A DNA stretch of 64,000 bases, taken from the NCBI GenBank assembly GCA_002269645.1, contig NIVC01000958.1:62001-126000 (forward strand), read 5' to 3'. The DNA comes from Macrostomum lignano. Lineage: Eukaryota. A model generated the notes under the pieces. That model saw only the letters and a list, made by a program, of their open reading frames with translations, was not told the DNA's origin and did not search any database. Of this stretch, positions 40,407 through 41,264 are shown piece by piece. Position 1 is the first letter of the stretch. Each line of letters opens with the position of its first letter. The position numbers and the translations under genes are program-made.

Positions 40407-41264
40407 TATGACTATGACTATGACTATGATAAGTACTTCCGGCGCCTCAGCCTAAGTAAAAAGGCTCTTACGCCACTAGAGATAATTTAGATTCCAGATT
40501 GGGAGTGTACTCATGTACACTAAAAGCCAATTAGACTATAGAGGACTGTACAGGGCAATAACATAAAATCCAAACCTCCCCGGGCGACAGTGACAGCGGT
40601 TCGACGAACCAGTCAGGAGCCCGTGCCCAAAAACCAGGTTAGAAGGCCCCTTAGCCTGTTAGGGATGGCCCGAAGGCCTAGAGCCGTGGCAACCATGCTG
40701 GGGCCGACCGCCCACCACCCCCGGGTACATATCAAAAACCTCCCCGGGGCCAGAGGGGGTTGAGTGAACCATTCAGGGAAGCCCGTGCCTACTCCTGGGT
40801 TAGATTAGCCAATACCGGTCATTTTACCGCCCCCCACGGCCGTGGCAACCCGAAGGAGCCTCCCCCCCAACTAAACCCCGGGTACTCTTGCCAACAGACA
40901 GTCTCTTATCTTTGAAGCGGCAGGAGGGCTAATCGCCGGGACTGTTTCACCCTTTGCTTCGCCAACCCGCCATTTCTATTGTGACCGTGCCAACGGTCTC
41001 GTCCTGCTCAGACTCAGTCCTGGTTCTGGCACACTCCAGCTTTAATAGGGTCGCTGGCTGTACGCTCAGAGGGCGCCTGAGGGATACCGTCAGAGCACCT
41101 TGGTACAGGTATAGGCCTGCCTTCCTATACAGCTACCCACAGCCCTTCCCGATCCACTATTACCCTCCAACCCAGCCTACTCACTCATCACAAGCTTTCA
41201 GCCAGGCAGAGACAAGTTTCACAGGAGTGACTGCGGTTAGGCGTCTCTATGCGAGACATAACCA
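40407..41264 (-). mobile_element. Non-autonomous non-LTR retroposon (858 bp) with (TCATAG)n tail
   Basis: 14-bp TSD TGCTTTCCCAAGCC (40393-40406, 41265-41278) and tail TATGACTATGAC.. (40407-40429). No credible ORF on the minus strand. Confidence 0.8.

What the first reader, a model, noticed from the sequence alone, without database searches (positions are those of the whole stretch)
40407..41264. ORF-less retroposon carrying two tandem, diverged copies of a structured RNA module
Seen: an 858-bp element with a 14-bp TSD and (TCATAG)n tail, plus a 5' hairpin on the sense (minus) strand, GGTTA-TGTCTC-GCATA-GAGACG-CC-TAACC. Two ~150-bp modules (~40572-40727, ~40736-40885) keep short blocks while the spacers diverge: AAACCTCCCCGGG, GAACCA.TCAGG..AGCCCGTGCC, GGTTAGA, GCCGTGGCAACC, CCCCGGGTAC. 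On the minus strand each module is closed by CCCGGG pairing, has a GGUUG/UAACC helix and contains a C(UUCG)G tetraloop. Established: several non-LTR clades carry self-cleaving ribozymes, and RTE-like elements have tandem-repeat tails. I cannot fit the modules to hammerhead, HDV, twister or pistol consensus. Inference: a candidate new ribozyme, IRES-like element or RT-recruitment motif.
Basis: partly seen in the sequence, partly recalled or inferred. Interest (0 to 1): 0.7.

Follow-up and report, generated by a model that had tools for sequence, protein, structure and literature searches.

The report
Flatworm retroposon with duplicated hairpin domain
This is one recent insertion of a small protein-less "copy-and-paste" mobile element in the genome of the flatworm Macrostomum lignano; its middle holds two old, diverged copies of a GC-rich hairpin-forming segment that may be a functional RNA domain, but nothing shows it is a ribozyme.

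Summary
The described sequence features are real. An 858-bp ORF-less element (40407-41264, sense on the minus strand) is flanked by an exact 14-bp target-site duplication. It ends in (UCAUAG)4 and starts with a stable hairpin. The window is Macrostomum lignano Mlig_3_7, contig NIVC01000958.1. Two tandem ~150-nt modules are 63% identical, and the identity is clustered in blocks (P about 1e-4). Each module folds on its own into a rod closed by a CCCGGG/CCCGGG helix. The shared fold is better on the sense strand (-42.9 vs -25.3 kcal/mol) and carries 7 double-sided pair changes. The evidence for a selected structure is still only suggestive. Single-module energies match dinucleotide shuffles (z -0.5, -0.7). 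A non-circular transfer test keeps no more pairs than chance, although double changes are enriched (P 0.03, 0.002). Rfam gives no hit to any ribozyme or other family. This copy was reverse-transcribed across both modules, which argues against efficient self-cleavage there. No second copy could be reached: none in the window, the protein collection, or the metagenome, prokaryote and viral DNA collections. The covariation test and the partner LINE therefore remain open. Verdict: an ordinary LINE-mobilised non-autonomous retroposon with a duplicated, possibly structured internal domain. Modest interest.

The parts
40393..40406 (.). Left copy of the 14-bp target-site duplication, TGCTTTCCCAAGCC. 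It abuts the element's 3' tail.
   Evidence: Exact direct repeat. Chance expectation is about 0.002.
40407..40429 (-). 3' tail, (UCAUAG)n with about 4 units on the sense strand
   Evidence: TRF finds period 6, 4.0 copies, 100% match. Sequence.
40430..40571 (-). AT-richer 3' region (GC 0.41). It holds a terminal stem-loop at 40441-40474 and a hairpin GUGUAC-AUGA-GUACAC at 40505-40520. It is the presumed part recognised by the partner LINE's reverse transcriptase.
   Evidence: Fold (z = -1.5), coordinates, GC. The recognition role is inferred from how stringent-type LINE/SINE pairs work.
40572..40728 (-). Module B, the 3' copy, 157 nt, GC 0.65. A rod-like hairpin closed by CCCGGG (40720-40725) pairing with CCCGGG (40579-40584). 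It contains GGCC-UUCG-GGCC at 40667-40678.
40729..40735 (-). 7-nt AU-rich spacer between the modules
40736..40885 (-). Module A, the 5' copy, 150 nt, GC 0.62. It has the same block order and the same closing helix (40875-40882 pairing with 40743-40750).
40886..41264 (-). 5' region, 379 nt, GC 0.55, non-coding. It starts with the hairpin GGUUA-UGUCUC-GCAUA-GAGACG-CC-UAACC at 41235-41263.
41265..41278 (.). Right copy of the 14-bp target-site duplication. It abuts the element's 5' end.

Best explanation
This is a young, single insertion of a non-autonomous (ORF-less) non-LTR retroposon in Macrostomum lignano.

Shown:
- Its sense RNA corresponds to the minus strand.
- It ends in a (UCAUAG)n tail.
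- It was inserted with a 14-bp target-site duplication, the signature of target-primed reverse transcription.

Inferred:
- A 'stringent-type' LINE that is not in this window supplies endonuclease and reverse transcriptase in trans. It recognises the AT-rich 3' region, with its terminal stem-loop, plus the hexamer tail.
- The RNA is made by Pol II or by read-through, not Pol III, because the sense strand has five T4-5 runs.

The two central modules:
- They are an old internal tandem duplication (63% identity, against perfect TSDs) of a ~155-nt GC-rich domain.
- On the sense RNA each copy folds into an irregular rod closed by a CCCGGG/CCCGGG helix.
- In that rod two conserved blocks, GCCACGGC and GGCACGGGC, pair with each other.
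- I take the conserved blocks to have been held by selection in the active element lineage. The most likely role is a protein-binding, RNP-assembly or RNA-stabilising domain of the retroposon RNA, doubled in dose.
- I do not take them to be a self-cleaving ribozyme.
For: Retroposon:
- Exact 14-bp TSD at exactly the tail and the 5' end.
- Perfect hexamer tail.
- No ORF longer than 63 aa on the sense strand.
- No protein homolog of any frame.
- No tRNA or other small-RNA head.
- T4-5 runs at sense positions 527, 632, 697, 740 and 803.

Host: the window's DNase II gene is 100% identical to a gene on NIVC01000958.1 of GCA_002269645.1, which is M. lignano Mlig_3_7.

Modules:
- 92 of 147 columns are identical, in runs of 15, 13 and 12, P = 1.5e-4.
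- The consensus fold has 37 pairs, all formed in both modules, 7 of them with changes on both sides. In 4 of 500 shuffles the values are reached, and slid controls collapse to 35-62% paired.
- Consensus energy is -42.85 on the sense strand against -23.3 +/- 3.7 for column shuffles (z = -5.3). The + strand gives -25.25 (z = -2.95). SCI is 0.63 against 0.43.
- Transferring one module's own MFE structure to the other gives 6 and 7 double changes, against 2.7 and 2.25 expected (P 0.03 and 0.002).
- Both modules independently predict the closing helix (p 0.96-1.0) and the GCC/GGC pairing of the conserved blocks (p 0.95-0.98).
Against: - Only one copy of the element, and so only two module sequences, could be examined.
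- Single-sequence folding energies are indistinguishable from dinucleotide shuffles (z = -0.04, -0.72, -0.46).
- The number of compensatory pairs in the alifold consensus is reached by 17% of column-shuffled alignments.
- In the non-circular transfer test the total of pairs kept, 33/45 and 29/44, equals chance (P 0.24 and 0.57).
- The alignment in the diverged stretches is uncertain.
- G-rich 5' arms and C-rich 3' arms make rod-like folds easy to obtain.
- No partner LINE was found. The window's only RT genes belong to DIRS-like elements with tyrosine recombinase.
- The modules lie 142 nt or more upstream of the tail. In studied stringent LINE/SINE pairs the RT recognition site lies right next to the tail.
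Confidence: 0.5

Rival explanations
1. The modules are a neutral internal tandem duplication with no RNA function. A ~160-bp segment was duplicated by slippage or unequal exchange in a genome that is full of tandem repeats, and it then drifted. The shared rod-like fold is a by-product of G-rich and C-rich arms and palindromic CCCGGG sites.
For: - Single-module energies equal shuffles.
- Pair retention in the transfer test equals chance.
- 17% of column shuffles reach 7 compensatory pairs.
- The window carries dozens of minisatellite arrays.
Against: - Identity is strongly clustered into blocks instead of being spread evenly (P = 1.5e-4).
- Double-sided changes are enriched (P 0.03 and 0.002).
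- The shared fold is much better on the sense strand than on the + strand.
- The modules are 37% diverged while the TSDs and tail are perfect. Both copies were therefore carried for a long time by an active lineage.
Confidence: 0.3
2. The element is an internally deleted or 5'-truncated copy of its autonomous LINE. On this reading the modules are simply part of that LINE's long 3' UTR, not a feature of a separate non-autonomous family.
For: - 858 nt without coding capacity ending in a LINE-type tail.
- ORF-less LINE derivatives are common (established knowledge: NARTc/L1Tc, RIME/ingi, HAL1).
Against: - No trace of an ORF2 C-terminus in any frame.
- The 5' end coincides with a stable hairpin, which looks like a defined 5' terminus and not a random truncation point.
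- With one copy this cannot be decided. The reading is compatible with the main explanation of the modules.
Confidence: 0.2
3. The modules act at the DNA level, as tandem promoter or enhancer monomers with binding sites for transcription factors, like the monomers of mouse L1 5' UTRs.
For: - Short invariant blocks separated by free spacers.
- The block GGTTGCCACGGC contains GTTGCC, which I recall as an RFX X-box half-site. This comes from memory and was not tested.
Against: - The modules lie 379 nt downstream of the 5' end, not at it.
- The conserved blocks are mutually complementary.
- The strand asymmetry of the fold, through G-U pairs, points to RNA.
Confidence: 0.08
4. Each module is a new self-cleaving ribozyme.
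For: - Precedents exist (established knowledge): hammerheads in Schistosoma Sm-alpha and in retrozymes, and HDV-like ribozymes at the 5' ends of R2, RTE and L1Tc.
- The modules have conserved, apparently unpaired blocks: UCUAACC and CCUGANUGGUUC.
Against: - No Rfam ribozyme model matches even at E <= 10.
- No hammerhead core is present.
- The inserted copy was templated by an RNA that was uncut at both modules and carried 379 nt upstream of them.
- A cleavage site in the middle would separate the 5' part from the tail needed for reverse transcription.
Confidence: 0.03

Closest known systems
Stringent-type LINE-dependent non-autonomous retroposons with short-repeat tails (L2/CR1/RTE/Rex1-mobilised SINEs, e.g. 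eel UnaSINE1 with UnaL2)
   Same: - TSD of about 10-20 bp.
- A 3' end made of a stem-loop followed by a short tandem-repeat tail instead of poly(A).
- No ORF, with mobilisation in trans.
The TSD, tail, stem-loop and lack of ORF are shown here. The rest is inferred.
   Different: - 858 nt is long for a SINE.
- There is no tRNA, 5S or 7SL-derived Pol III head, and there are internal T runs.
- The partner LINE is unknown.
- It has a duplicated ~155-nt GC-rich central domain.
ORF-less LINE derivatives (NARTc of L1Tc, RIME of ingi, SIDER, mammalian HAL1)
   Same: Several hundred nucleotides long, presumably Pol II-transcribed, and expected to share both ends with an autonomous LINE.
   Different: Sharing of the ends with a LINE could not be tested. 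Those families have poly(A) tails. No Pr77-like or HDV-like 5' element fits: only 1 nt separates the would-be P1 and P3 strands of the 5' hairpin.
Ribozyme-bearing retroposons (Schistosoma Sm-alpha hammerhead SINE-like elements, retrozymes, Penelope-like elements, HDV-like ribozymes of R2/RTE/L1Tc)
   Same: Flatworm host, a non-autonomous retroelement, and repeated structured-looking RNA modules.
   Different: No match to any ribozyme family model. The modules are internal and were not cleaved in the RNA that produced this copy.
Tandem monomers and internal repeats in LINE UTRs (e.g. mouse L1 5'-UTR monomers)
   Same: Tandem units of about 150-200 bp inside a non-LTR element's non-coding part.
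   Different: There are two strongly diverged units in the middle or 3' half, not a 5' array of similar promoter units. Their conserved blocks are mutually complementary, on the RNA sense strand.

Membership tests
Non-LTR (TPRT) retroposon insertion | Target-site duplication directly flanking both ends | tested here: met
   14/14 identical at 40393-40406 and 41265-41278. Chance expectation is about 0.002.
Non-LTR (TPRT) retroposon insertion | 3' end is poly(A) or a short tandem-repeat tail on one strand only | tested here: met
   (TCATAG)4 on the minus strand, 100% match. There are no terminal inverted repeats.
Non-LTR (TPRT) retroposon insertion | Member of a dispersed multi-copy family | not testable with these tools
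   - No second copy in the 64-kb window.
- None in the protein collection through six-frame ORFs.
- Only 2 chance matches in metagenome contigs.
- None in prokaryote or viral contigs.
- The rest of the M. lignano genome could not be reached.
Non-autonomous partner of a LINE | 3' region and tail shared with an autonomous LINE of the same genome | not testable with these tools
   The window has no LINE RT or endonuclease. The only RT genes are DIRS-like with tyrosine recombinase.
Classical SINE (Pol III) | tRNA-, 5S-, 7SL- or snRNA-derived head with an internal Pol III promoter, and no internal terminators | tested here: not met
   ARAGORN finds none. Rfam finds none even at E <= 10. The sense strand has five T4-5 runs.
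Known self-cleaving ribozymes (hammerhead, HDV-like, twister, twister-sister, pistol, hatchet, Varkud, hairpin) | Match to the family's sequence and structure model | tested here: not met
   cmscan against 4227 Rfam families gives nothing at gathering score. At E <= 10 it gives only HOTTIP_2 (17 bits, against 80 needed) and SNORD23 (15 bits, against 64 needed). Pseudoknotted HDV-like folds are modelled imperfectly by covariance models.
Self-cleaving ribozyme (any, new) | Site-specific self-cleavage | not testable with these tools
   This needs in-vitro transcription. The indirect argument against it is that this copy's template RNA spanned both modules uncut.
Evolutionarily conserved structured RNA | Folding energy below that of shuffled sequence | tested here: not met
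   z = -0.72 (module B), -0.46 (module A) and -0.04 (whole element).
Evolutionarily conserved structured RNA | Covariation that preserves base pairs among homologs | tested here: inconclusive
   Only two sequences are available.
- 7 double-sided changes among 37 consensus pairs.
- Enriched in the transfer test (P 0.03 and 0.002), but total pairs kept equal chance.
- 17% of column shuffles reach 7.
- Consensus-energy z = -5.3 on the sense strand against -2.95 on the antisense strand.

The most novel reading that the evidence does not exclude
The ~155-nt module is a previously undescribed structured RNA domain of flatworm retroposons. On this reading the rod closed by CCCGGG has a conserved internal platform, GCCACGGC paired with GGCACGGGC, plus unpaired UCUAACC and CCUGANUGGUUC. 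It would be required for mobilisation, for example by recruiting the partner LINE's ORF1 protein or RT, or by protecting the RNA. In the most extreme version it would be a new, slow or regulated, self-cleaving motif.
Probability: 0.1. Interest if true: 0.6.

Novelty: new member of a known kind. Interest (0 to 1): 0.3.

Why it matters
If the modules prove to be a selected RNA domain, they would give a handle on how a flatworm LINE recognises its non-autonomous passengers. M. lignano is a transgenic model in which this could be tested, and non-LTR elements are essentially undescribed in this species. I found no paper on M. lignano SINEs, LINEs or ribozymes. As it stands, this is an ordinary transposable-element insertion. 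Its main practical value is for repeat annotation of a very repeat-rich genome.

Tried and rejected
- Rfam, at gathering score on the whole window and at E <= 10 on 40300-41400, gave nothing credible.
- ARAGORN found no tRNA.
- blastn of the element against the window (word size 7) and the covariance model R1 built from the two modules found only the two modules themselves.
- A pseudo-protein joining all stop-free six-frame pieces of the element, searched against 5.8 billion proteins to catch spurious ORFs on other copies, gave no hit.
- Pattern scans with conserved blocks:
  - metagenome contigs gave 2 hits, both chance matches inside phosphoglycerate-kinase-like coding sequence;
  - prokaryote genomes gave 0 hits with two different patterns;
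  - viral contigs gave 0 hits with three patterns.
- Attempts to reach more M. lignano DNA through exact-protein look-ups of window ORFs all returned 'not on record'. The ORFs tried were DIRS gag and tyrosine recombinase, the P-element-like transposase parts, an ORF at 46-633 and the 151-aa ORF over the element.
- I tried to reconstruct the spliced 270-aa gene next to the element (37876-39283, minus strand) in order to look for a homeologous empty site. There were 1697 admissible splicings, so I abandoned it.
- The DIRS RT search gave only relatives of 79% identity or less, on short Logan contigs.
- Literature searches found nothing relevant. They covered the tail, the block sequences, and M. 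lignano SINEs, LINEs and ribozymes.
- HDV-like fit of the 5' hairpin was rejected by inspection, because there is no room for a P2 strand.
- A hammerhead core CUGANGA is absent from the sense strand.

Full report
**Where the window comes from.** The window has no tRNA and no Rfam gene. ORF density is low and there are dozens of micro- and minisatellites. Pfam finds a P-element/THAP9-like transposase, a DNase II gene and two RT genes. The DNase II ORF is 100% identical to a protein whose gene lies on NIVC01000958.1 (342,066 bp) of assembly GCA_002269645.1. Eight papers name that accession as the Macrostomum lignano Mlig_3_7 assembly. The fetched locus L005 is base-for-base window 35474-56523, so the window is record positions 62001-126000. 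The host is therefore a free-living flatworm with a very repeat-rich genome.

**The observation.** The sequence is as described.
- TGCTTTCCCAAGCC occurs exactly at 40393-40406 and 41265-41278. About 0.002 such 14-mer pairs are expected by chance in this 1.1-kb stretch. The two copies sit exactly at the two ends of the element.
- One end is (CTATGA)4 on the + strand, which is (UCAUAG)4 on the minus strand, with 100% matches. This fixes the sense strand as minus.
- The other end starts with GGUUA-UGUCUC-GCAUA-GAGACG-CC-UAACC (41235-41263). It folds at -12.5 kcal/mol, z = -3.0.
- The sense strand has no stop-free stretch above 63 aa. A query made of all six-frame pieces finds no protein among 5.8 billion.
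- There are no terminal inverted repeats.
- Together these are the signature of target-primed reverse transcription of a non-coding RNA by a LINE that uses short-repeat tails.
- It is not a classical Pol III SINE. There is no tRNA, 5S, 7SL or snRNA head, and the sense strand has five T4-5 runs.

**Anatomy on the sense strand**:

| Part | Window coordinates | Length | GC |
|---|---|---|---|
| 5' region | 41264-40886 | 379 nt | 0.55 |
| Module A | 40885-40736 | 150 nt | 0.62 |
| AU spacer | 40735-40729 | 7 nt | 0.14 |
| Module B | 40728-40572 | 157 nt | 0.65 |
| 3' region | 40571-40430 | 142 nt | 0.41 |
| Tail | 40429-40407 | 23 nt | 0.30 |

The 3' region contains a hairpin at 40505-40520 and a terminal stem-loop at 40441-40474, 11 nt before the tail. 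That layout is typical of the 3' ends that stringent-type LINE reverse transcriptases recognise. This last point rests on established knowledge and is an inference here.

**The modules.** Both carry, in the same order, these blocks:
- GUACCCGGGG
- GGUUGCCACGGC
- UCUAACC
- GGCACGGGCU
- CCUGA-N-UGGUUC
- AACC
- CCCGGGGAGGUUU

Of 147 aligned columns, 92 (63%) are identical. The identity is clustered in runs of 15, 13 and 12, and a permutation of the identity vector gives P = 1.5e-4. The TSDs and the tail are perfect while the modules differ at 37% of positions. The duplication is therefore far older than this insertion. Both copies were carried through the active lineage, and the blocks were kept while the spacers changed.

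**Is there a shared RNA structure? Evidence for.**
- RNAalifold gives a 37-pair consensus that is formed completely in both modules, with 7 pairs changed on both sides. Five of those lie in one helix next to the closing CCCGGG helix.
- The pair counter shows 100% paired cells. In 4 of 500 shuffles the observed values are reached, and the figure collapses to 35-62% paired when partners are slid.
- The consensus energy (-42.85) lies 5.3 sd below column-shuffled alignments on the sense strand. On the + strand it is only -25.25 (z = -2.95). SCI is 0.63 against 0.43. G-U pairs therefore favour an RNA of the sense strand.
- Each module, folded alone, predicts the closing helix (p 0.96-1.0) and pairing between the conserved GCC and GGC of the two large blocks (p 0.95-0.98).

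**Evidence against.**
- The MFE of each module, and of the whole element, is no better than that of dinucleotide shuffles (z = -0.72, -0.46, -0.04).
- 17% of column shuffles also give 7 or more double-sided changes.
- I also ran a non-circular test. I took the structure from one module alone, transferred it through the alignment, and permuted the other module's substitutions among the variable columns. The total of pairs kept equals chance (33/45, P 0.24; 29/44, P 0.57). Double-sided changes are enriched (6 against 2.7, P 0.03; 7 against 2.25, P 0.002).

Two sequences cannot settle this. The fair summary is 'suggestive'.

- The closing CCCGGG helix holds.
- The GGUUG/UAACC helix is not in the best folds but costs only 1.6-2.1 kcal/mol when enforced. 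It cannot be tested because both blocks are invariant.
- CUUCGG occurs in both modules, but on opposite sides of the GGUUGCCACGGC block. Only module B's GGCC-UUCG-GGCC is predicted to form.

**Ribozyme?**
- No Rfam family matches at gathering score in the window.
- At E <= 10 over 40300-41400 only HOTTIP_2 (17 bits, 80 needed) and SNORD23 (15 bits, 64 needed) appear.
- The hammerhead core CUGANGA is absent.
- The 5' hairpin cannot be an HDV-like P1/P3, since one nucleotide separates the strands where a P2 strand is needed.
- There is also an argument from the copy itself. Its template RNA ran uncut through both modules and 379 nt upstream. A cut there would separate the 5' part from the tail that primes reverse transcription. 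Efficient self-cleavage at the modules is therefore unlikely.
- An IRES has no ORF to serve.

**Copies and partner.** This was the decisive test and I could not run it.
- There is no second copy in the window by blastn or by a covariance model of the modules.
- There is none in the protein collection.
- Block patterns find only two chance matches in phosphoglycerate-kinase-like genes of metagenome contigs. They find nothing in prokaryote or viral contigs.
- The remaining M. lignano genome was out of reach. Window TE ORFs are not on record, and the neighbouring spliced gene could not be reconstructed.
- The window's RT genes carry tyrosine-recombinase C-termini, so they are DIRS-like elements and not LINEs. 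No LINE RT or endonuclease is present.
- I found no literature on M. lignano SINEs, LINEs or ribozymes.

**Conclusion.** The element is a LINE-mobilised, ORF-less retroposon copy (confidence about 0.85). Its two modules are an old tandem duplication of a GC-rich domain. That domain probably forms a rod-like hairpin on the sense RNA and may be a selected protein-binding or stabilising domain (about 0.35-0.4). The main rival is a neutral duplication (about 0.3). A new ribozyme is unlikely (about 0.03). It is best filed as a new member of a known kind, of modest interest until genome-wide copies are analysed.

Noticed in passing
window 1-64000: The window is Macrostomum lignano Mlig_3_7 (GCA_002269645.1), contig NIVC01000958.1, positions 62001-126000. 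This was identified through the DNase II gene and an exact match of L005 to window 35474-56523.
   Followed up: yes
window 5929-8559 (+) and 14047-17526 (-): Two DIRS-like retrotransposons: an RT ORF followed by an ORF with a tyrosine-recombinase-like C-terminus. One has a gag-like ORF with a SAP domain. The best database relatives are only 58-79% identical, and some more distant ones (33-35% identical) are filed as proteins of 'Candidatus Thiodiazotropha' MAGs, probably host contamination.
   Followed up: partly
window 25006-29012 (-): P-element/THAP9-like transposase split over three ORFs, with a TNP-like RNase H domain at E = 6e-14. It is probably a decayed DNA transposon or a domesticated gene with frame breaks.
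   Followed up: no
window 45474-46523 (+): An intronless DNase II gene (Pfam E = 5.5e-54). The word-indexed protein search returned no relative at E <= 1e-30 other than the gene itself, so it appears to be a rather isolated sequence.
   Followed up: no
window 39351-39996 and 41426-41542: The retroposon sits in a ~1.4-kb island between two arrays of the same 22/45-bp minisatellite (GGTGTAGTAGGGTTTTATGAGGTG...). The host locus may itself be a larger repeat unit.
   Followed up: no
window 1333-1601 and 61721-63109: The same 39-bp minisatellite (TGCTAGCTGGTCTCACACTGTCTCAGAGTGCTAATTAGA) occurs near both ends of the window, with 4 and 33 copies. In both places it is preceded at the same 106-bp distance by a (CTCCAG)3 repeat. 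This points to two copies of one repeat-bearing element about 60 kb apart.
   Followed up: no
window 11230-13142 and 53239-53845: Very long microsatellites: (TACA) with about 478 units and (TATC) with about 152 units. Several other high-identity minisatellites are present, with units of 16, 17, 20, 22, 23, 46 and 54 bp.
   Followed up: no
window 41265-41285 and 41338-41359: The target site (TGCTTTCCCAAGCCCCAAACTG) has a diverged paralog 73 bp downstream (TACTTTCCCAAACCTAAACTACTG). The insertion therefore hit a locally repeated sequence.
   Followed up: no
window 40683-40694 and 40839-40850 (minus strand): The conserved block GGTTGCCACGGC contains GTTGCC, which I recall as a half-site of the RFX X-box. 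The module 5' arms are G-run rich and could form G-quadruplexes. Both points are leads from memory or inspection and were not tested.
   Followed up: no
L001 6777-6799, L002 6025-6047: The 21-base block pattern matched two metagenome contigs inside a conserved coding stretch (…GTNQVARAV…) that looks like phosphoglycerate kinase. These are chance matches with no other similarity to the element.
   Followed up: yes
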